DNA of 64,000 bases from the NCBI GenBank assembly GCA_002269645.1, contig NIVC01002461.1, forward strand, positions 48,384-112,383. Direction: 5' to 3'. This DNA is from Macrostomum lignano. Its lineage: Eukaryota. The notes under the pieces are model-generated. The model saw only the letters and a program-made list of their open reading frames with translations, had not been told where the DNA came from and made no database searches. Made by a program: the position numbers and the translations under genes. Every line of letters begins with the position of its first letter. The first letter of the stretch is position 1. Below are positions 29,791 to 48,005 of the stretch, one piece after another.

Positions 29791-30029
29791 CGATGCATGA
29801 ATCTGGTTATTAAATTCTGTTGACAGTCAAGCCTCTGGCTAACCTGGGACATTGTATGCATTATTGTTTGCATTAAATTATTCAAGCTGGCTTCTTTGCT
29901 TTTAAAAAAAAGCTATTTTAGGGGGTGGGGATTAGATTATTTCTGGTTGAATTCATTTACGCTGTAGGGCTTCTTCGAATTAGAGAGGTATAGTGGGATG
30001 ATACTAGTATAGATTTGATTACGGACACA

Positions 30030-30665
30030 CACAGGGGAGATAAGGACAGAGATAGAGACACACAGGAGAGATAAAAACAGAGATAGAGACACACAGGAGA
30101 GATAAAAACAGAGATAGAGACACACATGAGAGATAAGGACAGAGATAGAGACACACATGAGAGATAAGGACAGAGATAGAGACACACATGAGAGATAAGG
30201 ACAGAGATAGAGACACACATGAGAGATAAGGACAGATATAGAGACACACATGAGATATAAGGACAGAGATAGAGACACACATGAGAGATAAGGACAGAGA
30301 TAGAGACACACATGAGAGATAAGGACAGAGATAGAGACACACATGAGAGATAAGGACAGAGATAGAGACACACATGAGAGATAAGGACAGAGATAGAGAC
30401 ACACATGAGAGATAAGGACAGAGATAGAGACACACATGAGATATAAGGACAGAGATAGAGACACACATGAGAGATAAGGACAGAGATAGAGACACACATG
30501 AGAGATAAGGACAGAGATAGAGGCACACAGGAGAGATAAAAACAGAGATAGAGGCACACAGGAGAGATAAGGACAGAGACACACAGGAGAGATAAAAACA
30601 GAGATAGAGGCACACAGGAGAGATAAGGACAGAGATGGAGGCACACATGAGAGATAAGGACATAT
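30030..30665. repeat. 31-bp minisatellite
   Basis: Unit gagataaggacagagatagagacacacatga. Confidence 0.95.
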
Positions 30666-31239
30666 TTGTGAATATTTCTCATCAAACCAACTTCTGCACA
30701 AATTGCAAGCCAGATGCCAAGTCTGCATAAATGGGATTACAGATAATAAAAGTGAGCTGACTTCCATATCAGCTGACCCAATAACCGATCAATTAGCTGA
30801 CAAAGCGAGTAATATTTTAGCGGGCACAATGGACTTACTAACTTAATTATAGGTACATCAGTTATGCTTTTATGGTTAGTTTGGGGGTACATTGATCTAT
30901 TCTATAAATACTTGTGCCAACACAATTATGCCAAAATGAATTGCAACCAGATCTTATGCCCTCACTATGTCCTCGCAGAATGGTAATTCCTAGTACCGAG
31001 AATCAATGCCCCCCTCTCAAATCCCACCCAGGTTTGTTTGACTAGCCAAGGGCTTATTGCATTGCTCAGGGGAAATTGTGTGTTTGCTGGCTAGGCATCG
31101 GTTCTTCTGGTCAGAAAGAGGAAGATATTCCATATAGGTGAATTCTTGCGGCTCTGTTGCATACCGATAGTGCACTGAAGATTGAATTCTTGGATGGCTG
31201 ACTTCGGGAGTCTAGAAGTGGGTGAAACAATGAGTGAAC

Positions 31240-31795
31240 CAGTGAGATACTGAGTGAGACAGTGAGAGAATGAGTGCGACAGTGAGACACTGAGTGAGAC
31301 AGTGAGAGAATGAGTGAGACAGTGAGAGAATGAGTGAGACAGAGGGAGAATGAGTGAGACAGTGAGAGAATGAGTGAGACAGTGAGAGAATGAGTGAGAC
31401 AGAGGGAGAATGAGTGAGTGAGACAGTGAGAGAATGAGTGAGTGAGACAGTGAGAGAATGAGTGAGACAGTGAGATATTGAGTGAGACAGTGAGAAAATG
31501 AGTGAGACAGTGAGAGAATGAGTGAGACAGTGAGAGAATGAGTGAGACAGTTAGAGAATGAGTAAGACAGTGAGAGAATGAGTAAGACAGTGAGAGAATG
31601 AGTGAGACAGTGAGAGAATGAGTGAGACAGTGAGAGAATGAGTGAGACAGTGAGAGAATGAGTGAGACAGTGAGATATTGAGTGAGACAGTGAGAGAGTG
31701 AGTAAGACAGTGAGAGAATGAGTGAGACAGTTAGAGAATGAGTAAGACAGTGAGAGAATGAGTGAGACAGTGAGAGAATGAGTGAGACTGCAAGA
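31240..31795. repeat. 20-bp minisatellite
   Basis: Unit agtgagacagtgagagaatg; related to the reverse complement of the 11422 array. Confidence 0.93.
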
Positions 31796-32509
31796 TGAGT
31801 TAGTGCGTGTCAGTCACGAATGGTTAAAATGTGGGCAAGAAGTAGAATCCCATGTTACTTCAGTCGCAGGTGTCAAATAGAAATTTTTTAATGCTAAAGC
31901 GAATTTTGTCGGTGAGAATTTTGGGAAATTTTATTCCAACCAAAATCGCGCTTCCATCTCTGGGAAAAAGTATCAAATTCCCCAACTGAAAGCCTCATCA
32001 ACGCCCAGTTTCCTGCGGCAGAGCTGTAACGGGAGGAAAAATGCAAAAATGGGTGAAAATGTTCTCATACATGATATAGGATACAGGAAGTGCCAGAAGC
32101 CCGGCTGTCTGCTTCTGCTGGATCTGCTTTCCATTGTTTGACACTGACGGCCTTCCTTGGCTACGAGCGGTCTCAGGATTTGTACTTCTATATAATCGCA
32201 CCTGCACTCGTTAAACACAAGCCTATCAGATCCCACAAGAACAGTGTACTGCTGGGAGATTGTATCTATCCATGTCTCTGTGAGTCAATCATTATTTCCG
32301 CCTGAATGAACTGCAGTCAGTCAATTCAATCTGAGCTCTCTGTGCTCAGCTCACAGGAACAGGCCTATGAAATATTAAATAACTGCAGCATTGACCAACT
32401 GGGGTTGTGATGAATTTTACCACACTTTATTGTTGTTAAGACTGGGACATGCGGAGTTCATTGGCAACCTGTACCTGTCTGTTTCCTATATAGGCATAGG
32501 AGCGTGGAG

Positions 32510-33090
32510 TCACACTGTGACACACCAGAGAGTCACACTGTGAGACAGCCAGAGAGTCACACTGTGAGACAGCCAGAGAGTCACACTGTGAGACAGCCAG
32601 AAAGTCACACTGTGAGACAGCCATAGAGTCACACTGTGAGACAGCCAGAAAGTCACACTGTGAGACAGCCAGAGAGTCACACTGTGAGACAGCCATAGAG
32701 TCACACTGTGAGACAGCCAGAAAGTCACACTGTGAGACAGCCATAGAGTCACACTGTGAGACAGGCAGAGAGTCACACTGTGAGACAGCCAGAAAGTCAC
32801 ACTGTGAGACAGCCAGAAAGTCACACTGTGAGACAGCCATAGAGTCACACTGTGAGACAGGCAGAGAGTCACACGGTGAGACAAGCAGAGAGTCACACTA
32901 CTGTGACACAGCCAGAAAGTCACACTGTGAGACAGCCATAGAGTTACACTGCGAGACAGGCAGAGAGTCACACTGTGAGACAGCCAGAAAGTCACACTGT
33001 GAGACAGCCATAGAGTCACACTGTGAGACAAGCAGAGAGTCACACTGTGAGACAAGCAGAGAGTCACACTGTCAGACAGCCATAGAGTCA
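32510..33090. repeat. 24-bp minisatellite
   Basis: Unit agagtcacactgtgagacagccag and variants. Confidence 0.95.
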
Positions 33091-33095
33091 CTGCC

Positions 33096-34624
33096 ATGTC
33101 AACCCGAAGCGCACCCGCCTGCAGTGACTCATTCTATGACCCATTCTCAACGACTTGCGTCGATCGGTGTGTCGGCGACAGCTTCAACATTTCTGTGCTG
33201 ACGGTAGATGACGGAGAGATTAAAAGCAGAATCTGCAACAAGCCATCGTCGGCCGCTGATGGTGCAGCCTCGGAGACTGCATTGATTGTTGTGCTGCTTG
33301 TGGCAGTCGTGGGAGTTTCCCGTGAGTGTCACAAAGCATTTTTACAATTCTCCAATCCTCCAATCCCCAGCAGTCTCTTCCCTAATCCTCACAGTCTCTT
33401 CCCTAATCCGCCACAGTCTCTTCCCTAATCCCCCACAGTCTCTTCCCTAATCCCCCACAGTCTCTTCCCTAATCCCCCACAGTCTCTTCCTAATCCTCCA
33501 CAGTCTCTTCCCTAATCCCCCACAGTCTCTTCACTAATCCCCACGCTCTGTTCCCTAATCCCCCACAGTCTCTTCCCTAATCCCCCACAGTCTCTTCCCT
33601 AATCCCCCACAGTCTCTTCCCTAATCCCCACAGTCTCTTCACTAATCCCCCACAGTCTCTTCCCTAATCCCCACGCTCTGTTCCCTAATCCCCACAGTCT
33701 CTTCCCTAATCCCCACGCTCTGTTCCCTAATCCCCACAGTCTCTTCCCTAATCAGCAAAGCTTCATCTCCTCTCTACCCGAACCAACGCAGTGGCAGCCG
33801 CAGCCGTTCTGCTGTACCGCCGTCGACAGCATCGGAGGCGTCGGGAACAGGGACCAGTGAGCGACACGCAGGACAGCGTCAAAGGCGACGCAGACTCAGA
33901 AATGTACAAGTCTACAACTGCTAAAGTCTGCAACAAAAACATGGTCACCAGCAGCACCAGCAGCAGCAGCAGCAACAGCAAAAGCAACAATGTACCGCTG
34001 CCTCCGCCCTTGCCGCTGAGCACAGAAGCCGACTCCGATGACACAGCGGCAGTTACGGTGGCTGCCGCAAAGTCTGTCAGCCTGCAGAGCATTCTCGGTC
34101 AGTTGGACCTGCTCAGGCCGCACCTGACTGCCTTCAAGGCGATGCTCTGGGAGCTGGAGAAGTGCCTGGACTTCGGAGCGCTTGAGCAGCCGTCGGCGCT
34201 CAACGACTGTCGAGAGGCTCGCGACCGGCTCAAACGATCGGTAATGATGCTGGAAGGTCAAGCGGATGAAGCGCTGCTAAGCGACCAGCTGCGAGCTTAT
34301 AAAGCCTCCCAGCTGCTGTCGTGGAGCGAGCGCTGCCTGAAGCGGCACCTGGTGTCAGGGAAGACGTACGCTCCGCAGAGTCACGTGACAGCCTCCGTGG
34401 CCAGAAAAAACCCAAACCCCAGACAGCAGAAGCAGCAACGGAACAACCCGAAGCAGAGCCGGAAGAAAGTGCAGCCAGCCAGACGCGCTCAATCGCAGCA
34501 AGTCGCTCGCCAGCAGCAGCGGGAGGGCCTGAATCGCCTGCCAAGTTTTTTGCAGCCGACTTCGACGGTGAATATTCGAAGGGCCCAGTCGTTGAGAGAC
34601 GCTGAGATGTGCACTCAACTGTGA
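33096..34624 (+). CDS. 3' part of a type I membrane protein (Cys-containing ectodomain, TM split across an intron, helical cytoplasmic region); 5' exons unresolved
   Basis: Exon ~33125-33321 (CSDSFYDPFSTTCVDRC...LIVVLLVAVVGVS, donor cc|gtgagt) joins an exon from ~33792 (cag|, AAAAVLLYRRRQHRRR) to the stop at 34624. The intron is filled by a 22-bp array. Confidence 0.6.
33365..33755. repeat. 22-bp C-rich minisatellite (intronic)
   Basis: Unit acagtctcttccctaatccccc. Confidence 0.93.
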
Positions 34625-36269: not shown

Positions 36270-36404
36270 CTCGATAGCTCGGTTGCTGGGGTGGATAGCT
36301 TTGTTGCTAGGGTTACTAGCTCGGTTGCTATGAGTATATAGCTCGGTTGCTGGGGTGGATAGCTTGGTTGCTAGGGTTACTAGCTCGGTTGCTAGGGTTA
36401 CTAG
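36270..36404. repeat. tagctcggttgctaggg minisatellite, left part (interrupted by the LTR element)
   Basis: The same array resumes at 45045. Confidence 0.9.
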
Positions 36405-37237
36405 TGTGATGATGGGGCTCAAGGGCTCGGTCCTTTCGTGCCCCTTTCCCAGACCCGGGTTCGTGTACTGACCCTGGCTGCGGTCCTCCACTGACACGCG
36501 TACGACGCGGTGTCCGTCGGGACTAGGCTGCTCGAGCGTACGACGCACGACAGCCTACAGACTCGCGTACGACGCAGAGCTGCTTGGGGTGGGACCGGCG
36601 TACGACGCACTTAATCCCTCTAAGGTGCCTAGTACAGATGCAGACCCAAATGACGTGCAAATTGGAAGGCTTACCAGCCGCGATTTCAGTCGTACAAGAA
36701 ACAGCGCCGTCAGAGCAGTGGTGATCTCGATATTCTTTACTTATATATTTGTCTAGCAATTCTGCGAGGAATAGCAATTCAGCAACCAACGCTGGCACAA
36801 TCGCCGAGGAGCCACGACGACGACGAGAATGGGGTCTCAAGGGGGCCGAATAAATAGGCAGCAAACTGGGGGTTGAGGGCGCGGGATAAAGGCAGAAAAG
36901 GGGGCTTAGACATCAGCCAAGGCAACGCATGAGCTGTACCAGCCAATCGCCGGGGCGCAGCACGGCAGACTGGGACTGGCAGCCAATCACAAACAGGGGC
37001 GGGGCAGCAAAGCTAACAAAATAATGGGGCGGGGTCGCACAGGGGGGGGGGTCGCACGCAGAGCATGGGGGGTTGACTCAACAGAAAAGGTCTAGGCAGG
37101 GAGGGGAGGGGTACGCACGCGCAGAAGTGCAGGTGAGTGAGTCAGAAAATATCTAAGGAGGGGGAGGGGAGAGGACGGCCCACTGGCCCGGTGCAGCAAC
37201 TAAGCAAAGAGCACATTGTCATAACACATTCATGACA
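36405..37237 (-). repeat. 3' LTR (833 bp)
   Basis: Differs from the 5' LTR by 2 substitutions and 3 G-run indels by eye. Confidence 0.96.
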
Positions 37238-37249
37238 CTCCCTCCCCCT
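37238..37249 (-). other. Polypurine tract
   Basis: AGGGGGAGGGAG immediately 5' of the 3' LTR on the - strand. Confidence 0.9.
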
Positions 37250-37812
37250 AGACAAAAGTTCGAGTTCGAAAAGTCGAATATTGAAATGATGCTACTATAA
37301 CAAAAAAATTGAACAGAGGAACAAACCGCATTTGAAAAATATTTTGGACTCGCATGGCAACTAGTTCGAACAAAAAACAAAACCGCAGTGATTATACCGT
37401 TTAAAAATGACGAAGAAACCTTCAAACATAGGATAGTGAGTACGCATCATTGGGAAGCAAAACGCAAATTTTGGGAAAAACTCACTTTAACAAAAACGCT
37501 GAAGTTCAAAAAAAAACGCTAAATGTTCACAAAAAACAAAAAAATGAAACCGTCAAACATTTACCCTCACAAGTAATACTAGCACTGCTTCCCTGCATCC
37601 CGCCGAGTACGGCCGTCGCTCTGGTGCCTCGTCTCCCTGTCGCTACTGTCGCCGGTTGCTCTGGTCGCTCTGCGCTGGTCGTCGAGTCCTGCGGTTGCTG
37701 CACAGCCGTGTCGCTCCGTCAGCACCCGCTAAGGCCGGTCCATCTCCGCTCCGCTGTCCCTGGGTCTGCACTGCAAAGTCCCTAGCCCCAAAGTCCCTAG
37801 GAAGACATAGCC

Positions 37813-38799
37813 TCAGTCAGAGCACGAATCCCACAGCCTACGGAGGGCACCCAGGACCAAACCCTGGCGTCGCAGGTCGAACAGCGGGAACACCACCATC
37901 ACCGACATGTAGACAGCTTGACACGCTTGGCGACTCCACCGACGAACTCCGTGCCCCGGATACTTGCGACCGTCTCGCTCCAAGTAGCCCAGGATCTGCA
38001 GCATCAACTCCGGACCGAATTCCTTGAAATCCACCGAGGCAGTGGCGCACTTCCCCTTCAGGGCTAGCAGCACCTCAAAGATGCCCCACGGGTCGCCCTT
38101 TCGCATTGCCTGGTGCAGTTTCTTCCGACTGGGTCCTACGTTCTCCAGTTCCGCGACGGTCACTGGTCGGCACGGTCTGGTCTGAAGCCGGTACGCTCTC
38201 TGCAGGTATTCTTCAATCAGGTTTCTACATCCGGCACAATCTTCCTCCGCTTCCCATGACGTCTCAAGCTCCTCTACACCGGCCCACTGCAGCAGATACT
38301 CCGCTCCTCGCTCCGTGACTCGTACTCCTAAGACCTTCTCGACCTCGTACTCCTCCGGCAGTGTCTCACTCGCCTCGTTCATCTCTTCGTCCTGCTCATC
38401 GTCTGAGGCCTCCTCACTTGCCTCCATCTTGACGTGCTCCTCATCCCTCCTCGCCTGTTCTCTCTCGTACGCCTCCTCAGCTAATCGGTCGCTCTCTTGT
38501 AGTCTTTCTATCTCTTCTCGGAGATCGTCGGGCATGTCTTCATCCTCTAACATCCCTTCTGCGAGCCGAAGCATCTCATCCCGGTCACGAACAGCATTTC
38601 CAAAGATATCGTACAGCTTTCTAAGGAACGGACACGACAGTATTCGGTACGCCTCTTCGCACTCCTGGAATCTCTTCCGCGTCTCCTCTGTTGCGCTCTT
38701 GTCAGGGTGCAGTTCGCGTGCTCGACCGTAGAACGCTTTCCGAATCTGTGCCGCAGACGCCCACAGCTGCACTCCAAGACACTCGTAGAGGTCCGCCAT
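37813..38799 (-). CDS. Retrotransposon accessory protein: J-domain + acidic linker + chromodomain + unknown C-terminal domain, 328 aa
   Basis: aa 3-67: DLYECLGV..ASAAQIRKAF..ELHPDK..RFQECEEAYRILS..RKLYD. aa 149-200: EEYEVEKVL..EYLLQWAG..TSWEAEEDC..CRNLIEEY. Intact ATG-to-stop and intronless. Confidence 0.9.
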   Translation of the reverse strand: MADLYECLGVQLWASAAQIRKAFYGRARELHPDKSATEETRKRFQECEEAYRILSCPFLRKLYDIFGNAVRDRDEMLRLAEGMLEDEDMPDDLREEIERLQESDRLAEEAYEREQARRDEEHVKMEASEEASDDEQDEEMNEASETLPEEYEVEKVLGVRVTERGAEYLLQWAGVEELETSWEAEEDCAGCRNLIEEYLQRAYRLQTRPCRPVTVAELENVGPSRKKLHQAMRKGDPWGIFEVLLALKGKCATASVDFKEFGPELMLQILGYLERDGRKYPGHGVRRWSRQACQAVYMSVMVVFPLFDLRRQGLVLGALRRLWDSCSD

Positions 38800-38898
38800 C
38801 TGTAACAGTCCGGCCTAACTCCGATGAGCAATGAGACACGCACGACATGTACCTCCCTTCCCCCTTGGCTATCCAAGCGCCGTACACCGGACCCTTCT

Positions 38899-40451
38899 TC
38901 AGTAGTGGTACACCGGGACCCCAAACCGATCTGGCGGTCGCCGCAGACGTCTTGGTCGCCCTGCTTCCTCCTGTGCCGTCCTCACTTCCTGCTCGGGTAC
39001 GTTGGCGTCGTTCGGCTCTGCCTCATCCTCTTCGTCCTGCTCCTCGTCGTACCGCGCCTCATCGTCGTGCTCTTCTTCGTCATCGTCTGCTTCTCGACGC
39101 TCAGGTCCGGGCTCACAGTCTTCGGCCAGATTTCGGGTGTCCGGTGGAGCGTGATCTCTTGGATCTTGAAACCGCAGCTGAAGATCTTCAAACTCTTCAT
39201 CTTCCTGCTCGGATTCCTGGTCCTGCGGCCCTCGCGCTGCGGTCCACCTCTGGGTCTCGCCCCGTTGCACTCTCTGCCTTCGGCTTCGTCCAGCAGCGGA
39301 ATTACCACGTCGCGGCCTGGTTTTTCCCGAACTGGCCCTCCCAATTTCCTCTCCTGTCTCTTGATCGTCTGCCGCCTCCGTCTGAACCTGAACCGGCCGG
39401 AGATTGTTGAAGTGCACCACCTTGGTCTTCTGCGGCTGTGTCGGATCCTGCACTCGATACAACGCATCTGACAGCTTCTCCAGGACCTTCACTGGGCCGC
39501 GCCAGTTGATATGGAATTTGCTTTTCTCTCCCATCTCCAAGCACGGATAGTACAGCAAGACAGAGTCGCCCCTCTGAATCGCCTTGCCCTTCACTTTCCG
39601 ATCGTAGTTCATTTTCTGGCGTCGCTGAACCGTCTCGCGCCCTTCTCGAACGTGTTCATGGCATGAAGCAGGTTCTGCTGAATCTCTTGCACAAACAAGG
39701 GATAGCTGTCCGTCTTTCGCCTAAGGTCCTCTGGTTCGAATCCCAGCGGCATCTCCTGACCATGCAGCATGTAGTAGGGCGTGTAACCGGTGGACGCCTG
39801 GACCGTCGATCGATAAGCCATCAAGGCACTTGGCAGGTACTCCTCCCAGGCGTTCTGACCCTTCTGTACCAGATACGTGCGCAAACTGTTCTTCAGGAAC
39901 CCGTTAAATCGTTCCACCTGTCCGTTGCCACTCGGGTGGTAGGCGCTCGTCCTGGTCTTCTTCACACCCAACAGCTCGCACAGCTTCCTGACGATCCCCG
40001 ACTCAAAGTTCCTTCCTTGGTCTGAGTGAAGTACCCGGGGGCACCCGTGATTGGCAATCCAGCGTTCGAATAGCACCCTTGCGATCGTTGCCGCCTTCTG
40101 GTTCCGGATGGCATAAGCGTCAGGCCACTTTGAGAACGCATCTTGCACCGTGAGGATGTAGAAGTTTCCTTTCTTGCTCCGTGGCAACGGCCCGATGACG
40201 TCTGTCATCACGATATCGAATGGGCTTGAACTCGGAATCGGCTCCATCGGTGCAATTGGTTTCTTGCCAGCTTTGGCCTTGGTGCAGTCCAAACAGGCTT
40301 TTACGTGCTCTTCGACCTCGCGGCCAAGTCCCGGCCTCCAAAACGATTGCCGCACCTTCTCCTTGGTCTTGAAAATCCCAACGTGCCCTCCACTCCGTCC
40401 ACCATGAGCTTCTTCCAGCACCGCTCTCAGCATATTCCGTGGCAACACCAC
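38899..40451 (-). pseudogene. Integrase region of pol (frameshifted)
   Basis: HHCC finger (AHGG..GH..CLDC), D-D35-E (MTD, HSDQG, VER), WRGP motif and an acidic tail ending RRLRRPPDRFG. Frame changes near 40450 and 39660. Confidence 0.9.
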
Positions 40452-42658
40452 TTGGGCTGACGTCTACTGACCGTATGACACAGCAACACCTCACTGTCCG
40501 ACACCTCAAGGTCACGACGTCTTTCGACAATCCTCCTTGCCGTCGGTGATATGCGCCGCAAATGCTCTTCGGTTATCTCTCCGTCGCCGTGAGCCAGCAG
40601 CTCCATCGCCTGACGAATGTCGCTGTCCATCTTCTGGCTCTCTCTGATCTCCTCCGAGGTCCACTTCTGCAATCCCAACGCGTTCACGCCGATCTGCTCT
40701 TGTGCACATCCAGGACAACTCTCGCTTCCTTGATGGCGCCGACGTGGCTTCCTGGAGAGAGCGTCCGCGTGTTGATGTTTCACTCCCGGACGATGTTCGA
40801 TGCGATACCTGTACGGAGCCAAGAGTTCCAGCCATCTGGCCAGTTGTCCTTCTACGTCCCGCAGCGAATGCAGCCACTTCAAGCTGCTGTGATCGGTGCG
40901 CACTAGAAACTCTCGCCCCATCAGGTAATAACGAAACTTCTGTACGAAAAACACCACGGCCAGCAACTCGACTCGTGTCGTGCAGTAATTCCGTTCTTCT
41001 CGCGACAACGTCCTGCTTCCGTAAGCTATTACCTTCTCACTCCCATCTTTCTGCACCTGCGAAAGCACAGCGCCAATTCCTTCTTTTGTGCTACCGTCTG
41101 TGTCTAAAACGAATTCTCCAGCGTCCTCCGCAAAGTTTGGAAACGCCATGACCTCAGATCCCTGCAACCTTTCCTTCAGGGCCTCGAATGCGGCTTGACA
41201 CTCCTCATCCCAGCTCCACGGGCAATCATGTCGGGTCCGTCGCAGCATCGGCTCAGCAATGCGGGAAAAATCTGCGATGAATTGCCGGTAATACCCGCAC
41301 AGTCCCAGGAATGACCTTACTTCCTTCACATTCTTCGGAGTTGGCCAGTCACGAATTTCGGCAATCTTTTCTGGACTCGTGGCGATCCCATCAGCTGACA
41401 CTACGTGTCCCAGGAAGGTCACTGACTTCAGCAGGAATGCGCACTTCTTCGGCTTCAGTTTGATGTTCGCTGCTCGCAACCGTCGAAAAACCGTTTGCAA
41501 CCGTTCCAGGTGCTCCTCCACCGTTCTTGACCACACTAGCAGGTCGTCCAGATACACCAAACACGTCTTCCAGCACAACTTCCCCAACACCACATTCATT
41601 AGCCGGCTGAATGAAGCCGGTGCATTTGTCAATCCAAATGGCATAACGTTCCAGGCGTACTGCTGTACCCGGTGTGAAACGCCAAAGGCCGTCTTCAGTC
41701 TGTCGCTGGGTTCCACCGCCATCTGCCAGTATCCCGACTGCATGTCCATGGTCGAAAAAATCTTGGCATCGCCTAGGCTCTCCAACAGGTCATCTGTCCT
41801 GGGCAACGGCACTGCATCCTTCTTGGTCACTTCATTCAGTTTCCGGTAGTCACAACAGAACCTCAGGGAACCGTCCTTCTTTTTCACGCACACCACCGGA
41901 GAGCACCATGGGGACTGAACCTCGCTGATTCTCCCAGCTTCCAGCAAGTCATCCAACTCCTTGTCCACTTCCTGCCGCAGGTACGGGGGAATCCGCCTCG
42001 CCGCTTCTTTCACAGGCCTGGCATCTCCAGTGTCGATCTCGTGCTTCATCACCGTCGTACAGCCGAGATCCTTGGAGTCCTTAGCAAAGACAGCCCGATG
42101 TTGGGAAATCAGCTCCCTGAAGTCGGCTTCCTCCTCCTCCGACAGGCCACATGAACCCCACTCGCGGAATTCTTCGATCGGGTCCCATGCCTCCGCTTCA
42201 TTCTTGGCCTCTACGTCGTCGTCCAAGCGCACCACGTTGATACCTCCGTTCGGTTCCAAAGGAATAAACCAGCCAATCGTCTCTCCTTTCTTGACCCTCT
42301 TCCTACAACTGGACGTATTCAGCAATCTCATCGGCAGCCGTCCATCCACACCGGGCGCTACCAGAGCTCGAGCCATCGCCAAATCCTTCTCAGCGGCCTT
42401 CACCGGCTTTTCTTCCGTTATGCCGACCGATCCGCAGTTTCTTGCGCCCTTTTTCTCTACCCTGGCTGGCATGACCACTTCTTGCGCCGGTTCCAGAAAT
42501 ACCGTTGTCTCGGCTTTGATTCGACACACCACGGGCAGCTCGCCTTTCTGCCGTATCGGAACTCTAACATCGCCCACTCGAAAGACAAACTCCGAATAGT
42601 TGATGACGCAACGATGAACGATGCTGTTTGAAAAATTCGGACCCGAGAATGACATCAT
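40427..42658 (-). pseudogene. Reverse transcriptase and RNase H region of pol
   Basis: SPWCSPVVCVKKKDGSLRFCCDYRKLN, MPFGL, LVYLDD, and RNase H DGS..GIGAV, ELLAVV, RTDH. Confidence 0.93.
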
Positions 42659-43175
42659 AACGCAATCCGTCCACTACGAAGAAATTCGCTGACCACCGCT
42701 CGCCGCCAATCTCCACGTCCAGCACAATGCAGCCTCTCATCCTCATCGCACCTCCATTGGCCGTTGAAAGGGAACCGTCCATTGCAGTCAGTCTCTCCCT
42801 CACCTCTTGCGGCAGCCTCAGGAAAACATCACAGCTCAGCACTGACACACTCGCACCACTGTCTAACAGCAGAGCCACTGGCTTGCCGGAAACCGCACCG
42901 GAAATAAAAACTGTCAGAGGCTCCGTTGATACCGACGAACACGCCTCATGAACCAGGTTGCTCTTTGAATTCCCATCACCAGAGACGCACTTGGATTTAT
43001 TTACAGAGTTAGTGAGCAACACCGGTTCCTCGCCCTGGGAGACTTCACTTCCTGGCAGGGTCCCGACTCTCCCCGGTCGGTCCCCTCGGCCCGTTTCCCG
43101 ACTTCGGACACTTGAAGGATAGGTGGCCTTCACCGTTGCACTTGTGACATCGTACTGGCGATTTCCCGTTTCCAC
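42564..43175 (-). pseudogene. Aspartic protease region of pol
   Basis: LLDSGASVS and DVILGSEF. Out of frame with RT because of a 7-bp duplication at 42610-42623. Confidence 0.9.
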
Positions 43176-44100
43176 TTGTCTGGCTGGTTTTCTTGGGACA
43201 CTTTGATGAGATATGGCCCCACTCTCGACACGAAAAACACTGCACAGCCTTCCGACTCGCCGGGGTCGGCTCTTCCGCTTCTCCAGACCTCCGCTCCTCC
43301 ATCTCTTTCATTCGCATCTCCATGGCCGCAAGCTGTTTTCGAAGCATCTCGACCTCACTGCTTTCGGAAGCCTCATTTCTAGTCTCAGCTGTGACAGCAC
43401 AGACGGTAGCTCTTTTTGATCCCTGACCTGGTGGACCGTGACTTGCCCTAACCGCCGCTTCCAGCTGATGCACTAGACGCATCGCGTCTGCTAAGGTCTC
43501 CGGCTGGCTCATGTACAATCGCTCCCGCACAGCCACCCCCGCACGGACGCCTCGCATAAATCGCTCTTTCGCAAGATCATCGCGCACATCGGCAGGCGCA
43601 TCAGGAAAGGCGTTTGCGACCAACTCAATCACAGCTTCAGAGAAATCTTCTACCGACTCCTTCTCGCTCTGCTCTCTATTGCTCAGTTCTGTGCGGTAGT
43701 CGACGACGGTACGGTGCATAGTGAACCTATCCCTCAAGGCCTGGGTAAATTCTTCGAACTGCAAGTCGTCCCCAAGGTTCATGTTGTCGACAACTTGGAA
43801 TGTGCTGAAGTCTAGATTGCTGAGCAACTGAGCGCGCCGATTCTGCATCGGAATCTGCATGGCATCGCAATAAGCTACGAAGAGCCTCAACCACTTCACG
43901 AAATTCATTCCTGGAGCATACTTCACCGGCCTCTGAATCCTGAGAGCCCCCGCTTGCTGCATGTTCTGCTGAATCTGGGCAGTCAAAGCGGCGACCAGAT
44001 CATTAACACCAAAGGCTCCAGCAGCACCTCCAGCAGCACCTCCAGCCGCACCCCCAGCCGCACCTCCAGCAGCACCTCCAGCAGCACCTCCAGCATCCAT
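43045..44100 (-). CDS. Gag, 351 aa, two CCHC zinc knuckles
   Basis: CFSCREWGHISSKC and CHKCNGEGHLSFKC; (GGAA)n N-terminus. Confidence 0.93.
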   Translation of the reverse strand: MDAGGAAGGAAGGAAGGAAGGAAGGAAGAFGVNDLVAALTAQIQQNMQQAGALRIQRPVKYAPGMNFVKWLRLFVAYCDAMQIPMQNRRAQLLSNLDFSTFQVVDNMNLGDDLQFEEFTQALRDRFTMHRTVVDYRTELSNREQSEKESVEDFSEAVIELVANAFPDAPADVRDDLAKERFMRGVRAGVAVRERLYMSQPETLADAMRLVHQLEAAVRASHGPPGQGSKRATVCAVTAETRNEASESSEVEMLRKQLAAMEMRMKEMEERRSGEAEEPTPASRKAVQCFSCREWGHISSKCPKKTSQTSGNGKSPVRCHKCNGEGHLSFKCPKSGNGPRGPTGESRDPARK

Positions 44101-44190
44101 ACCACGGCGTCACAGTTTCTAACCTTAATTTCTCACAATATTCCGCGCCTCGAGCTTTGTTCCTTGCTTAGTCTTCCACAGCGCAGGGTC

Positions 44191-44205
44191 CCACCAAGGA
44201 TGCCA
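44191..44205 (-). other. Putative primer-binding site
   Basis: TGGCATCCTTGGTGG begins 3 nt downstream of the 5' LTR. Cognate tRNA not identified. Confidence 0.7.
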
Positions 44206-44208
44206 ATT

Positions 44209-45044
44209 TGTGATGATGGGGCGCAAGGGCTCGGTCCTTTCGTGCCCCTTTCCCAGACCCGGGTTCGTGTACTGACCCTGGCTGCGGTCCTCCACTGACA
44301 CGCGTACGACGCGGTGTCCGTCGGGACTAGGCTGCTCGAGCGTACGACGCACGACAGCCTACAGACTCGCGTACGACGCAGAGCTGCTTGGGGTGGGACC
44401 GGCGTACGACGCACTTAATCCCTCTAAGGTGCCTAGTACAGATGCAGACCCAAATGACGTGCAAATTGGAAGGCTTACCAGCCGCGATTTCAGTCGTACA
44501 AGAAACAGCGCCGTCAGAGCAGTGGTGATCTCGATATTCTTTACTTATATATTTGTCTAGCAATTCTGCGAGGAATAGCAATTCAGCAACCAACGCTGGC
44601 ACAATCGCCGAGGAGCCACGACGACGACGAGAATGGGGTCTCAAGGGGGCCGAATAAATAGGCAGCAAACTGGGGGTTGAGGGCGCGGGATAAAGGCAGA
44701 AAAGGGGGCTTAGACATCAGCCAAGGCAACGCATGAGCTGTACCAGCCAATCGCCGGGGCGCAGCACGGCAGACTGGGACTGGCAGCCAATCACAAACAG
44801 GGGCGGGGCAGCAAAGCTAACAAAATAATGGGGCGGGGTCGCACAGGGGGGGGGGGTCGCACGCAGAGCATGGGGGGTTGACTCAACAGAAAAGGTCTAG
44901 GCAGGGAGGGGAGGGGTACGCACGCGCAGAAGTGCAGGTGAGTGAGTCAGAAAATATCTAAGGAGGGGGGAGGGGGAGAGGACGGCCCACTGGCCCGGTG
45001 CAGCAACTAAGCAAAGAGCACATTGTCATAACACATTCATGGCA
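44209..45044 (-). repeat. 5' LTR (836 bp)
   Basis: Direct repeat of 36405-37237. Confidence 0.96.
44640..44840 (-). promoter_or_regulatory. Putative U3 promoter of the 5' LTR
   Basis: Two CCAAT boxes (44747, 44787), GGGGCGGGG boxes (from 44800) and an AT-rich tatttat on the - strand about 90 bp further on. Confidence 0.4.
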
Positions 45045-45660
45045 CTAGGAGTAGATAGCTCGGTTGCTAGGGATAGATAGCTCGGTTGCTAGGGCTGGAT
45101 AGCTCGGTTGCTGGGGTGGATAGCTCGGTTGCTGGGGTGGATAGCTTGGTTGCTAGGGTTACTAGCTCGGTTGCTAGGGATAAATAGCTCGGTTGCTAGG
45201 GCTGGATAGCTCCGATGCTGGGGTAGATGGCTTGGTTGCTAGGGTTACTAGCTTGGTTGCTAGGAGTAGATAACTCGGTTGCTAGGGATAAATAGCTCGG
45301 TTGCTAGGGCTGCATAGCTCGGTTGCTGGGGTGGATAGCTCGGTTGCTGGGGTGGATAGCTTGGTTGCTAGGGTTACTAGCTCGGTTGCTAGGGTTACTA
45401 GCTCGGTTGCTAGGAGTAGATAACTCGGTTGCTAGGGCTAGATAGCTCGGTTGCTAGGGTTAATAGCTCGTTTGCTAGGGATAGATAGCTCGTTTGCTAG
45501 GGATAGATAGCTCGGTTGCTAGGGCTAGCTCGGTTGCTAGGGATAGATACGAGCTAGCTTGGTTAGGGTGCTTGGTTGCTAAGGCTAGAGATAGCTGGGT
45601 TGATAGGGGAAGATAGCTCGGTTGCTAAGGATAGATAGCTTAGATTGCTGGGTTGGCTGC
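45045..45660. repeat. tagctcggttgctaggg minisatellite, right part
   Basis: Continuation of the 36270 array. Confidence 0.92.
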
Positions 45661-46279: not shown

Positions 46280-48005
46280 AAATCCCAAATCCCATCTGAT
46301 CCTAGAGCTCAATATCCCAAATCCTATCTATCATAGGGATCAATAATCCCATATCACATCTGACTCTAGAGAGCTCAATAATCCCAAATCCCATATGATC
46401 ATAGGAATCAATAATCCCAAATCCCATATGATCATAGGAATCAATAATCCCAAATCCCATCTGATCATAGGAATCAATAATCCCAAATCCCATCTGATCA
46501 TAGGAATCAATAATCCCAAATCCCATCTGATCATAGGAATCAATAATCCCAAATCCCATCTGATCATAGGAATCAATAATCCCAAATCCCATCTGATCAT
46601 AGGAATCAATAATCCCAAATCCCATATGATCATAGGAATCAATAATCCCAAATCCCCTCTGATCATAGGAATCAATAATCCCAAATCCCATCTGATCATA
46701 GGAATCAATAATCCCAAATCCCATCTGATCATAGGAATCAATAATCCCAAATCCCATCTGATCATAGGAATCAATAATCCCAAATCCCATCTGATCATAG
46801 GAATCAATAATCCCAAATCCCATCTGATCATAGGAATCAATAATCCCAAATCCCATCTGATCATAGGAATCAATAATCCCAAATCCCATCTGATCATAGG
46901 AATCAATAATCCCAAATCCCATCTGATCATAGGAATCAATAATCCCAAATCCCATCTGATCATAGGAATCAATAATCCCAAATCCCATATGATCATAGGA
47001 ATCAATAATCCCAAATCCCATCTGATCATAGGAATCAATAATCCCAAATCCCATCTGATCATAGGAATCAATAATCCCAAATCCCATCTGATCATAGGAA
47101 TCAATAATCCCAAATCCCATCTGATCATAGGAATCAATAATCCCAAATCCCATCTGATCATAGGAATCAATAATCCCAAATCCCATATGATCATAGGAAT
47201 CAATAATCCCAAATCCCATATGATCATAGGAATCAATAATCCCAAATCCCATCTGATCATAGGAATCAATAATCCCAAATCCCATCTGATCATAGGAATC
47301 AATAATCCTAAATCCCATATGATCATAGGAATCAATAATCCTAAATCCCATATGATCATAGGAATCAATAATCCCAAATCCCATATGATCATAGGAATCA
47401 ATAATCCCAAATCCCATATGATCATAGGAATCAATAATCCCAAATCCCATATGATCATAGGTATCAATAATCTCAAATCCCATCTGATCATAGGAATCAA
47501 TAATCCCAAATCCCATATGATCATAGGAATCAATAATCCCAAATCCCATATGATCATAGGAATCAATAATCCCAAATCCCATATGATCATAGGAATCAAT
47601 AATCCCAAATCCCATATGATCATAGGAATCAATAATCCCAAATCCCATATGATCATAGGGATCAATAATCCTAAATCCCATATGATCCTAGAGCTTAATA
47701 ATCCTAAATCCCATATGATCCTAGAGCTCAATAATCCCAAATCCCATATGATCCTAGAGCTCAATAATCCTAAATCCCATATGATCCTAGAGCTCAATAA
47801 TCCTAAATCCCATTTGATCCTAGAGCTTAATAATCCTAAATCCCATATGATCCTAGAGCTCAATAATCCCAAATCCCATATGATCCTAGAGCTCAATAAT
47901 CCTAAATCCCATATGATCCTAGAGCTCAATAATCCCAAATCACATGATTATAGGGATAAATAATCCCAAATCCCATATGATCCTATAGCTCAAAATCCCA
48001 AATTC
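46280..48005. repeat. 33-bp minisatellite, about 50 highly homogeneous copies
   Basis: Unit atcataggaatcaataatcccaaatcccat(a/c)tg. It accounts for three 459-532 aa spurious ORFs. Confidence 0.97.

What the first reader, a model, noticed from the sequence alone, without database searches (positions are those of the whole stretch)
37813..38799. Ty3/Gypsy element carrying a stand-alone J-domain + chromodomain fusion ORF in the env position
Seen in sequence: between the integrase stop (38899) and the PPT (37249), on the sense strand, is an intact, intronless 328-aa ORF. It has a canonical J-domain with HPD (aa 31-33, nt 38709-38701), an acidic helical linker, a chromodomain (aa 149-200) and about 125 aa of unrecognised C-terminal domain. 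Established: J-domains need HPD to stimulate Hsp70; polyomavirus T antigens use a J-domain to remodel Rb-E2F; chromoviruses fuse chromodomains to integrase; plant VANDAL transposons encode anti-silencing VANC proteins. I know of no LTR retrotransposon with a J-chromo accessory gene, and no common host protein with this architecture. Inference: the protein may be a transposon-encoded factor that delivers Hsp70 to chromatin (anti-silencing or integration targeting), chaperones particle assembly, or interferes with chaperone-dependent Piwi loading.
Basis: partly seen in the sequence, partly recalled or inferred. Interest (0 to 1): 0.92.

Follow-up and report, generated by a model that had tools for sequence, protein, structure and literature searches.

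The report
Retrotransposon-encoded J-domain plus chromodomain accessory gene
A young, recently jumping Ty3/Gypsy retrotransposon of the flatworm Macrostomum lignano carries its own conserved Hsp70 co-chaperone gene (J-domain, HP1-type chromodomain, novel helical domain) where retroviruses carry env; I found no description of such an accessory gene family.

Summary
Window 37813-38799 (-) is an intact 328-aa ORF with a canonical J-domain (Pfam DnaJ E=4.6e-16, HPD at aa 31-33) and a chromodomain (E=1.4e-12). It lies between the integrase stop and the PPT of an 8.6-kb Ty3/Gypsy element (36405-45044, LTRs 99.4% identical, TSD CTAG) of Macrostomum lignano.

It is not a one-off passenger. Three insertions with different TSDs all keep the ORF intact, with no indels, while pol carries 6-11 frame-disturbing indel differences. 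A 76%-identical homologue gives dN/dS 0.18.

The new result is that the ORF belongs to an apparently undescribed family: J-domain, acidic linker and a conserved C-terminal five-helix bundle. This gene follows integrase in at least five diverged element lineages, one with intact gag and pol. The chromodomain occurs in only two of them, so it looks like a later addition.

A splice-acceptor hexamer (YTNYAG) abuts the ATG in all four lineages with DNA. That matches the M. lignano SL trans-splice motif and implies a separate mRNA.

The C-terminal domain has no detectable sequence or fold relative. Function is inferred: an adaptor bringing host Hsp70 to a family-specific partner, here also tethered to chromatin. 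One of three aromatic-cage residues is missing. Two unrelated J+chromo ORFs exist elsewhere.

The parts
36405..45044 (-). Complete Ty3/Gypsy LTR retrotransposon (8640 bp) of Macrostomum lignano.
   Evidence: The LTR pair is 99.4% identical with TG..CA termini and a CTAG target-site duplication. Pfam finds gag, PR, RT, RNase H and IN domains in that order. Other copies are 98.4-99.6% identical.
44209..45044 (-). 5' LTR.
   Evidence: It contains no canonical heat-shock element.
44132..44136 (-). GTGAG, the only splice-donor-like site in the 108-nt leader between the 5' LTR and the gag ATG.
   Evidence: It is conserved in L002 and L003, and L005 has GTGAG at the equivalent place. It matches the M. 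lignano cis-donor motif GT[G/A]AG (PMC8629364).
43045..44100 (-). gag, 351 aa, intact, with two CCHC zinc knuckles. Its N-terminus contains a 12-nt tandem repeat.
   Evidence: one HSP, no frame change, no stop.
38899..43175 (-). pol (PR, RT, RNase H, IN, IN C-terminal domain). It is broken in this copy by three frameshift-type breaks, with no in-frame stop inside the aligned segments. The integrase C-terminus has no chromodomain.
   Evidence: Pfam domains. Breaks were counted against the intact single-ORF pol of L005. The breaks are not shared with L002 (1 break) or L003 (3 breaks), and most indels are runs of a single base type, so they may be copy-specific mutations or long-read assembly errors.
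38800..38805 (-). TTACAG, a splice-acceptor hexamer directly abutting the ATG of the accessory ORF.
   Evidence: It matches the SL trans-splice acceptor motif [T/C]TNCAG of M. lignano (PMC8629364). An equivalent YTNYAG lies 0-1 nt before the ATG in L001, L005 and L006, against a background of 0.0025 per nt.
37813..38799 (-). Accessory ORF, 328 aa plus stop. Annotated in GenBank only as a hypothetical protein (the window protein is P0004; PAA78660.1 is the one-residue variant P0001).
38608..38793 (-). J-domain (aa 3-64), with HPD at 38701-38709.
   Evidence: Pfam DnaJ E=4.6e-16. PDB J-domains match at E down to 7e-12. dN/dS is 0.13.
38350..38607 (-). Acidic, predicted-helical linker (aa 65-150).
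   Evidence: Translation. AF2 predicts a helix at low confidence. dN/dS is 0.31.
38197..38349 (-). HP1-class chromodomain (aa 151-201). The cage is Y151 and W172, with V175 at the third position.
   Evidence: Pfam Chromo E=1.4e-12. The best PDB matches are Swi6, CBX5 and CBX1 at E 2e-10 to 6e-10, with alignments. dN/dS is 0.14.
37816..38187 (-). C-terminal five-helix bundle (aa 205-328), the family-defining domain with no known relative.
   Evidence: AF2 gives pLDDT 79.7 and pTM 0.71. Foldseek finds no match with E below 0.2 in PDB or BFVD. There is no Pfam hit and no PDB profile hit. It is homologous to the C-termini of P0029, P0035 and P0091. dN/dS is 0.14 over aa 202-283.
37250..37812 (-). 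Non-coding 3' region between the ORF stop and the PPT. It is T-rich.
37238..37249 (-). Polypurine tract AGGGGGAGGGAG.
36405..37237 (-). 3' LTR.
36401..36404 (.). Target-site duplication CTAG. The other copy is at 45045-45048. The target is a 22-bp tandem-repeat array that the element splits.

Best explanation
The ORF is a genuine, selected accessory gene of a young and recently transposing Ty3/Gypsy family of Macrostomum lignano. It is the chromodomain-bearing member of an apparently undescribed family of retrotransposon-encoded J-domain proteins. The family consists of a J-domain, an acidic linker and a conserved C-terminal five-helix bundle, and its gene lies between integrase and the PPT in at least five diverged element lineages. 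How it most likely works: (1) It is translated from its own processed mRNA. That mRNA is made by splicing at an acceptor directly in front of the ATG, either by SL trans-splicing or by cis-splicing from the leader GTGAG. This step is inferred from conserved motifs. (2) The J-domain, with its intact HPD loop, docks on host Hsp70 and triggers its ATPase. This is established for J-domains in general and inferred here. (3) The C-terminal bundle, shared by the whole family, holds the partner or client on which Hsp70 is to act. This is inferred, and the partner is unknown; it could be an element protein such as Gag or integrase, or a host factor. (4) In this lineage an HP1-type chromodomain has been inserted between the linker and the bundle. 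It adds affinity for histone-tail marks, so the Hsp70-recruiting adaptor is concentrated on heterochromatin-like chromatin. There it could either process or place the integration complex, or loosen silencing complexes on element copies. This step is also inferred, and it is weakened by the missing third cage aromatic.
For: Domains: DnaJ E=4.6e-16 and Chromo E=1.4e-12. HPD and all four J helices align to solved J-domains. The chromodomain is closest to Swi6 and HP1. Part of the element: the ORF lies inside an LTR pair with a TSD. Three insertions have different TSDs (CTAG, GCTT, CTTA) and each has the ORF intact. A further copy sits inside the chimeric gene model P0005. Selection: dN/dS is 0.18 overall against the L001 homologue, and 0.13, 0.31, 0.14 and 0.14 for J, linker, chromo and C-terminus. 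The window and L002 differ by 5 synonymous and 1 non-synonymous change. The 987-nt ORF has zero indels among copies, against 6-11 non-3n indels in pol. Family: P0035 follows an intact gag and a single-ORF pol on L005. P0029 follows the integrase C-terminus on L006. The M. lignano models P0091 and P0009 run from the integrase C-terminus into a J-ORF. The C-terminal domains are homologous. The relatives have DnaJ but no Chromo. Expression: YTNYAG lies 0-1 nt before the ATG in four lineages whose upstream sequence is otherwise unalignable. Background is 0.0025 per nt, and the window site fits the published SL acceptor motif exactly. A donor-like GTGAG is conserved in the leader. GenBank annotates the ORF as a gene of its own, from a pipeline that cuts transcripts at trans-splice sites.
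Against: No expression, binding or activity data were available, so every functional step is inferred. The third aromatic-cage residue is Val here and Leu in L001, so methyl-lysine reading may be weak or altered. The C-terminal bundle has no recognisable relative, so its partner is unknown. The L001 homologue lacks the last ~45 aa of the bundle. Insertion sites give only a weak hint: 2 of 3 copies lie in or next to tandem repeats, in a genome with 15% tandem repeats (PMC5730564). pol is frame-broken in all three M. lignano copies examined, so these particular copies may not be autonomous.
Confidence: 0.5

Rival explanations
1. Particle or pre-integration-complex chaperone. The family's core job would be Hsp70-driven assembly, uncoating or nuclear delivery of the element's own nucleoprotein particle, with the C-terminal bundle binding Gag or integrase. 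The chromodomain would be a secondary add-on with little or no methyl-histone binding.
For: The conserved core is the J-domain plus the C-terminal bundle, and most lineages have no chromodomain. The J-domain is the most constrained segment. The cage lacks one aromatic residue. From established knowledge, polyomaviruses use J-proteins and Hsc70 for capsid assembly and disassembly.
Against: The chromodomain itself is under purifying selection, with dN/dS 0.14 and 18 synonymous against 14 non-synonymous changes. It keeps the HP1-type signature, including two cage residues. No link between the bundle and Gag or IN has been shown.
Confidence: 0.25
2. Dedicated anti-silencing factor. The protein would bind marked chromatin on element copies and use Hsp70 to strip silencing complexes. 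The closest analogies are VANC of VANDAL transposons and the host J-protein DNAJC2/ZRF1, which displaces Polycomb.
For: The chromodomain is HP1-class. Chromo-less relatives carry a hydrophobic stretch followed by an S/D/E run (SIM-like) in the linker, which could target SUMO-dependent silencing machinery. That last point is an inference from memory about SUMO-interaction motifs.
Against: This is entirely inferential. The SIM-like motif was not tested and is weak in P0035. The cage is incomplete.
Confidence: 0.12
3. Interference with chaperone-dependent PIWI or Argonaute loading, by titrating or misdirecting Hsp70.
For: Only the presence of a functional-looking J-domain, together with general knowledge that small-RNA loading needs Hsc70/Hsp90.
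Against: Nothing in the sequence points to PIWI or Argonaute. This reading does not explain the chromodomain or the conserved bundle.
Confidence: 0.04
4. Neutral passenger: a host gene fragment recently captured by one element and carried along without any function for the element.
For: The J-domain and chromodomain are both ordinary cellular domains. pol in these copies is frame-broken.
Against: dN/dS is 0.18 across all four segments. Homologous ORFs occupy the same position in elements whose pol is only 42-45% identical. The splice acceptor at the ATG is conserved. The ORF has no indels while pol has 6-11.
Confidence: 0.04
5. F-box-like adaptor: the C-terminal LQILGYLERD..RRWSRQ stretch would be an F-box linking to an SCF ubiquitin ligase.
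For: Visual resemblance only.
Against: There is no Pfam hit at E<=10, no PDB profile hit and no F-box among the Foldseek matches.
Confidence: 0.02

Closest known systems
Chromoviruses (Ty3/Gypsy elements with a chromodomain at the integrase C-terminus, e.g. MAGGY, Tf1/sushi group)
   Same: A Ty3/Gypsy element that encodes a chromodomain downstream of the integrase core. The presumed logic is the same: contact with histone marks.
   Different: Here the integrase C-terminus has no chromodomain. The chromodomain sits in a separate ORF behind three stops, fused to a J-domain and a helical bundle. It is HP1-like rather than integrase-type.
Polyomavirus large T and small t antigens (viral J-domain proteins)
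   Same: A mobile genetic parasite encodes its own J-domain with HPD, fused to a partner-binding module, so that host Hsc70 acts on a chosen complex.
   Different: There is no sequence relationship beyond the J-domain. The partner modules and the type of element differ (DNA virus against LTR retrotransposon).
Third ORFs of LTR retroelements: errantivirus env, and plant aORFs (Ogre, Retand and others)
   Same: The position between pol and the PPT or 3' LTR. Probable expression from a spliced subgenomic mRNA.
   Different: The product is not a glycoprotein or an uncharacterised aORF, but a co-chaperone-type protein (DnaJ plus Chromo). No J-domain aORF appears in the reviews and surveys searched.
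DNAJC2 (ZRF1/MPP11), a host class-C J-protein with chromatin-binding domains
   Same: A J-domain combined with a chromatin-reading module. It is known to displace a repressive complex (recalled from memory, not tested here).
   Different: It uses SANT domains that read H2A ubiquitin rather than a chromodomain. It is a cellular gene, and no homology outside the J-domain was detected.
LEDGF/p75-type integration tethers
   Same: A chromatin reader combined with a small helical bundle is the architecture of a tether that links integrase to marked chromatin.
   Different: This is an analogy only. Foldseek did not retrieve the LEDGF integrase-binding domain. LEDGF is a host protein and has no J-domain.
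P0102 (ENA ERZ25067524) and P0135 (JGI 3300030609), J+chromo ORFs from unidentified low-GC eukaryotic contigs
   Same: DnaJ followed by Chromo in one short ORF.
   Different: They have no C-terminal bundle: the chromodomain is the C-terminal domain. The J-domain of P0102 is of a different type. L007 shows neighbouring NUP50-like and Complex I 49-kDa-like ORFs and no RT or IN. They are only 29-30% identical to the window ORF, so they are probably independent fusions.

Membership tests
Ty3/Gypsy (Metaviridae) LTR retrotransposon | Two LTRs with TG..CA ends flanked by a short target-site duplication. | tested here: met
   The LTRs are 835-838 bp and 99.4% identical. The TSD is CTAG here, and GCTT and CTTA in the other copies.
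Ty3/Gypsy (Metaviridae) LTR retrotransposon | gag with CCHC knuckles, and pol in the order PR-RT-RNaseH-IN. | tested here: met
   The Pfam domains are found in this order.
Ty3/Gypsy (Metaviridae) LTR retrotransposon | PPT abutting the 3' LTR, and a PBS after the 5' LTR. | tested here: inconclusive
   The PPT is clear. A TGG-initiated stretch starts 3 nt after the 5' LTR, but it was not matched to a tRNA, and the window contains no tRNA gene.
Ty3/Gypsy clade assignment (Mag, CsRN1, Gmr1/Osvaldo, Mdg3) | RT phylogeny against GyDB references. | not tested
   No reference set was available in the tools. The PR-RT-RH-IN order argues against Gmr1, which has integrase before RT (from memory).
J-domain protein (Hsp40/DNAJ), class C | J-domain above the family threshold, with an HPD tripeptide between helices II and III. 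| tested here: met
   DnaJ scores 59.1 bits against a cutoff of 27.8. HPD aligns with that of Ydj1 and DnaJ.
J-domain protein (Hsp40/DNAJ), class C | Absence of the G/F region, zinc-finger and DnaJ C-terminal domains that define classes A and B. | tested here: met
   Pfam finds only DnaJ and Chromo above threshold.
J-domain protein (Hsp40/DNAJ), class C | Stimulation of Hsp70 ATPase. | not testable with these tools
   Biochemical property.
HP1/CBX family | Chromodomain with three aromatic cage residues. | tested here: not met
   Y151 and W172 are present. The third position is V175, and Leu in L001.
HP1/CBX family | C-terminal chromoshadow domain. | tested here: not met
   There is no Chromo_shadow hit. 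The C-terminus is an all-helical bundle.
Chromovirus | Chromodomain fused to the C-terminus of integrase. | tested here: not met
   The integrase C-terminal ORF has only Integrase_p58_C and a weak SH3_Tf2-1 hit. The chromodomain is in a separate ORF behind three stops.
Errantivirus / env-bearing Ty3/Gypsy | The third ORF encodes an envelope glycoprotein. | tested here: not met
   The third ORF is DnaJ plus Chromo plus a helical bundle.
New retrotransposon J-ORF family (proposed here) | J-domain with an LSCP(F/Y)xR motif, an acidic linker and a conserved C-terminal bundle (LQxLxFLxRD ... GRRxW ... FxLR), encoded directly downstream of a Ty3/Gypsy integrase. | tested here: met
   Alignments A2 and A3. 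Pairwise phmmer E-values range from 1e-5 to 1e-23. Genomic context is shown in the window, L005 and L006, and the chimeric models P0091 and P0009 run from integrase into the J-ORF.
F-box proteins | F-box motif or fold. | tested here: not met

The most novel reading that the evidence does not exclude
[quoted passage not shown] It would then work as a transposon-made, Hsp70-powered heterochromatin remodeler or integration tether. That would be a new class of retroelement accessory function and a new link between the chaperone system and transposon-chromatin conflict.
Probability: 0.25. Interest if true: 0.88.

Novelty: new variant of a known kind. Interest (0 to 1): 0.72.

Why it matters
Accessory genes of LTR retrotransposons are rare, and most have no assignable biochemistry. 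This one has a clear biochemical handle, a J-domain with HPD. It shows strong signs of selection, belongs to very young and recently transposed copies in a tractable model flatworm, and has a modular history: an old J-plus-bundle core with a chromodomain added later. That history shows which part is core and which part is targeting. If the inferred mechanism holds, a retroelement brings its own adaptor for the host Hsp70 machine. That strategy is known from polyomaviruses but not from retrotransposons, and here it would be directed at chromatin. The conserved acceptor at the ATG also suggests that a retroelement uses SL trans-splicing to make a subgenomic mRNA. Existing M. lignano RNA-seq data could test this directly. 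The work also gives a domain-level annotation to the GenBank 'hypothetical protein' gene models of this ORF (PAA78660.1, and the fragment PAA71432.1).

Tried and rejected
- **F-box idea for the C-terminus:** rejected. There was no Pfam hit at E<=10, no PDB profile hit and no Foldseek hit.
- **Read-through or fusion with integrase:** rejected. The ORF is in the same frame as the integrase C-terminus, but three stops intervene.
- **Heat-shock link:** a published paper shows HSE-bearing LTR families in M. lignano (PMC12801592). This element has no canonical HSE anywhere in the window.
- **Full-length AF2 on a 3-sequence alignment:** unusable, with pLDDT 52. Only the C-terminal domain model was good enough to search with.
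- **Widening the family:** a profile search of the 5.8-billion-protein set with the C-terminal alignment returned nothing. A single-sequence search with P0029 returned only P0029 and P0035. Two metagenome scans and one viral-contig scan found nothing.
- **L001 as an SL-bearing transcript:** rejected. Its 18 nt upstream of the ATG do not match the published SL, so it reads as genomic or unspliced sequence.
- **Clade assignment of the element:** not achieved, because no reference RT set was available.
- **Insertion-site preference:** only three sites could be read, so the evidence is too weak to use.
Full report
**1. What is at the coordinates**

The window comes from the flatworm Macrostomum lignano. 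The ORF product is identical to one member of an NCBI protein cluster from assembly GCA_002269645.1. It differs by one residue from PAA78660.1, 'hypothetical protein BOX15_Mlig001265g11'.

The ORF at 37813-38799 on the minus strand encodes 328 aa.
- Pfam finds DnaJ at aa 3-64 (E=4.6e-16) and Chromo at aa 151-201 (E=1.4e-12). Both are well above the curated cut-offs.
- HPD is at aa 31-33.
- The J-domain aligns over its whole length with solved J-domains. The best match is Ydj1 at E=7e-12.
- The last ~125 aa hit nothing in Pfam, even at E<=10.

**2. The element around it**

An 8640-bp Ty3/Gypsy element lies on the minus strand at 36405-45044.
- The LTRs are 835-838 bp and 99.4% identical, with TG..CA ends.
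- The target-site duplication is the 4-bp CTAG.
- The polypurine tract AGGGGGAGGGAG abuts the 3' LTR.
- gag is intact at 351 aa, with two CCHC knuckles.
- pol has the order PR-RT-RNaseH-IN plus an integrase C-terminal domain.

I compared pol with the intact single-ORF pol of a related element (L005). In the window copy, pol carries three frameshift-type breaks and no in-frame stop inside the aligned segments. Copy L003 also has three breaks and copy L002 has one, and the breaks are not at shared places. Most indel differences between copies are runs of a single base type. They could therefore be copy-specific mutations or errors of the long-read assembly, and I cannot tell which.

The integrase C-terminus has no chromodomain. 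The accessory ORF is in the same frame as the integrase C-terminus, but three stop codons separate them. It is therefore a stand-alone gene and not a chromovirus-type integrase extension.

**3. Is it part of the family or a private passenger?**

Four other M. lignano copies could be examined.
- L002 is 98.4% identical in nucleotides and L003 is 99.6% identical. Both are full elements at different loci, with TSDs GCTT and CTTA against CTAG in the window. These are three independent insertions, and each has the 328-aa ORF intact.
- L004 is a rearranged copy in which only an 80-aa fragment of the ORF is annotated.
- The chimeric gene model P0005, from an older assembly, contains yet another copy inside an MSH6-like gene.

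Among the window, L002 and L003, the 987-nt ORF has no indels and 0-6 substitutions. Between the window and L002 there are 5 synonymous changes and 1 non-synonymous change. Over the same comparisons pol has 6-11 indels that are not multiples of three, and gag has 0-4.

A more distant homologue is P0002/L001, a 1.1-kb contig from run SRR24204725. It is 76% identical in protein and 80% in DNA.
- Overall dN/dS is 0.18, with dS 0.79.
- By segment, dN/dS is 0.13 for the J-domain, 0.31 for the linker, 0.14 for the chromodomain and 0.14 for the C-terminal region.
- That homologue ends about 45 aa earlier than the window ORF, and its downstream sequence is unrelated.

**4. A wider family**

An exhaustive HMMER search of 1.84 billion representative proteins was mostly flooded by ordinary DnaJ and chromodomain proteins. 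It also returned several proteins that share both the J-domain and the C-terminal region of the window ORF.
- P0035 is 264 aa, from JGI metagenome 3300040801. On its 7-kb contig (L005) it lies 83 nt downstream of an intact 1254-aa pol, which is preceded by a gag.
- P0029 is 309 aa, from run SRR31628392. It follows an integrase C-terminus on L006.
- Two chimeric M. lignano gene models, P0091 and P0009, run from an integrase C-terminus straight into a J-ORF.

The shared features are these:
- a J-domain with an unusual LSCP(F/Y)xR motif;
- an acidic linker;
- a C-terminal domain with the conserved blocks LQxLxFLxRD, GRRxW and FxLR..G..L..L.

The pol proteins of the window element and of L005 are only 42-45% identical, so the gene is old within this group of elements. 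None of the distant members has a chromodomain. It is present only in the window family and in L001. The simplest reading is that an HP1-type chromodomain was inserted into a pre-existing gene made of a J-domain and a helical bundle.

**5. The domains in detail**

- **Chromodomain.** It is closest to the HP1 class: Swi6, CBX5 and CBX1 at E 2e-10 to 6e-10. In those alignments the first two aromatic-cage positions are kept (Y151, W172). The third, F or Y in HP1 and Swi6, is V175 here and Leu in L001. Methyl-lysine binding is therefore plausible but uncertain.
- **C-terminal domain.** With four sequences in the alignment, the AF2 model of aa 205-328 reached pLDDT 79.7 and pTM 0.71. It is a five-helix bundle.
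- **Fold and profile searches.** Foldseek against PDB and against viral predicted structures gave no match with E below 0.2. A profile search of PDB sequences returned only de novo helical bundles at non-significant E-values.
- **F-box idea.** A visual resemblance to an F-box was not supported by any test.

**6. How it is probably expressed**

The six bases in front of the ATG are TTACAG. This fits the top motif at M. lignano SL trans-splice acceptor sites, [T/C]TNCAG, which sits right at the junction (PMC8629364).

An equivalent YTNYAG lies directly before the ATG in L001 (TTTTAG) and L006 (CTGTAG), and one base before it in L005 (CTGCAG). The upstream sequences are otherwise unalignable. The hexamer occurs about once per 400 nt in these elements, so four such placements by chance are very unlikely.

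The 108-nt leader contains a single donor-like GTGAG. It is conserved in L002 and L003, and L005 has one at the equivalent place.

The ORF is therefore most likely translated from a processed subgenomic mRNA. That mRNA would be made either by SL trans-splicing or by env-like cis-splicing.

The published SL ends in ATG. Joined to the ORF's own ATG, it would be in frame.

GenBank lists this ORF as a separate gene. The annotation pipeline cut transcription units at trans-splice and poly(A) sites (PMC5730564). This is consistent with a separate mRNA but is not proof.

**7. Mechanism**

What is shown:
- a canonical J-domain;
- an HP1-class chromodomain with an incomplete cage;
- a conserved orphan helical bundle;
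- a fixed position after integrase;
- purifying selection;
- recent transposition of ORF-bearing copies;
- a conserved acceptor at the start codon.

What is inferred:
- The J-domain recruits and activates host Hsp70.
- The bundle binds the family's common partner or client.
- The chromodomain concentrates the adaptor on marked chromatin.

What Hsp70 does there cannot be decided from sequence. It could process or place the integration complex, or it could dismantle silencing complexes. Because the core of the family lacks a chromodomain, a chaperone role on the element's own particle or integration complex is a serious rival. Chromo-less relatives carry a hydrophobic stretch followed by an S/D/E run in the linker. 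This resembles SUMO-interaction motifs, but that is recalled from memory and was not tested.

**8. Comparison with what is known**

The element is a Ty3/Gypsy member.
- It fails the chromovirus definition, because the chromodomain is not on integrase.
- It fails the errantivirus definition, because the third ORF is not an env.

The protein is a class-C-type J-protein.
- It is not an HP1 family member: it has no chromoshadow domain and only two of the three cage residues.

The closest functional analogies are:
- polyomavirus T antigens, which are parasite-encoded J-domain adaptors;
- DNAJC2/ZRF1, a host J-protein acting on chromatin;
- chromoviral and LEDGF-type chromatin tethers.

The J+chromo architecture is not unique. 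P0102 and P0135, from low-GC metagenome contigs, have DnaJ followed by Chromo. They lack the bundle, and P0102 lies among cellular-looking ORFs.

**9. Novelty**

Full-text searches found no paper that describes a J-domain ORF in an LTR retrotransposon. The following papers were checked individually:
- the M. lignano LTR-retrotransposon study, which mentions none of DnaJ, J-domain or chromo;
- the DARTS method paper;
- a metazoan env-element survey.

From the occurrence counts in the search tables, a survey of captured ORFs in bdelloid rotifers and a review of accessory domains also contain no J-domain term.

I rate this as a new variant of a known kind. The known kind is an LTR retrotransposon with an accessory ORF. 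The new content is a gene class not reported before. The functional reading remains unproven.

Noticed in passing
window 36274-36404 and 45045-45652: The element is inserted into a 22-bp tandem-repeat array (215-bp higher-order period), and the insertion splits the array. The 3' flank of copy L002 lies 12 nt from a 900-bp (CTCTC)n array, while L003 is in non-repetitive sequence. Three sites are too few to call a target preference.
   Followed up: partly
window 44016-44095 (gag N-terminus): A 12-nt tandem repeat encodes a Gly/Ala-rich run at the start of gag. It has 6.7 copies in the window and in L003, and 10.6 copies in L002, so it is a length polymorphism inside gag.
   Followed up: no
window gag 43045-44100 versus ORF 37813-38799, compared with L002: Synonymous divergence between the window copy and L002 is about five times higher in gag (dS 0.12) than in the accessory ORF (dS 0.023). 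This suggests mosaic or recombinant copies.
   Followed up: no
L005 1-7008 (JGI metagenome 3300040801): A GC-rich (63%) contig carries an apparently intact relative: gag, a single-ORF pol of 1254+ aa, and a chromo-less J-ORF. A PBS-like site followed by GTGAG precedes gag. The host organism is unknown.
   Followed up: partly
linker regions of P0029, P0091 and P0035: The chromo-less family members carry a hydrophobic stretch followed by a Ser/Asp/Glu run, which looks like a SUMO-interaction motif. It lies in the same part of the linker where the window protein has its chromodomain.
   Followed up: no
L007 794-1585 and L008 17-979: Two unrelated short ORFs from low-GC (0.38-0.39) metagenome contigs also combine DnaJ and Chromo, without the C-terminal bundle. 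L007 also has NUP50-like and Complex I 49-kDa-like ORFs and a second DnaJ ORF, and shows no RT or IN.
   Followed up: partly
window 46281-48003: A 33-bp satellite with 52 copies at 95% identity lies about 1.2 kb from the element's 5' LTR. Several other arrays (periods 20-31 bp) occupy 30027-33753.
   Followed up: no
window 50368-51045, 54329-59479 and 18457-19359 (all minus strand): ORFs that look like host exons: acetyl-CoA transporter-like (Acatn, E=3e-30), Smg8/Smg9-like (E=1.5e-53 and 3e-10) and a KIF1B-like fragment.
   Followed up: no
L004 1-12252: A fourth M. lignano copy is rearranged, with foreign segments of about 0.65 kb and 4.3 kb interrupting pol. Only an 80-aa fragment of the accessory ORF is annotated there.
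   Followed up: no
P0006 and P0039 (ENA contig): Proteins made of up to six tandem, near-identical J-domain repeats scored second in the representative search. They appear unrelated to the element family.
   Followed up: no
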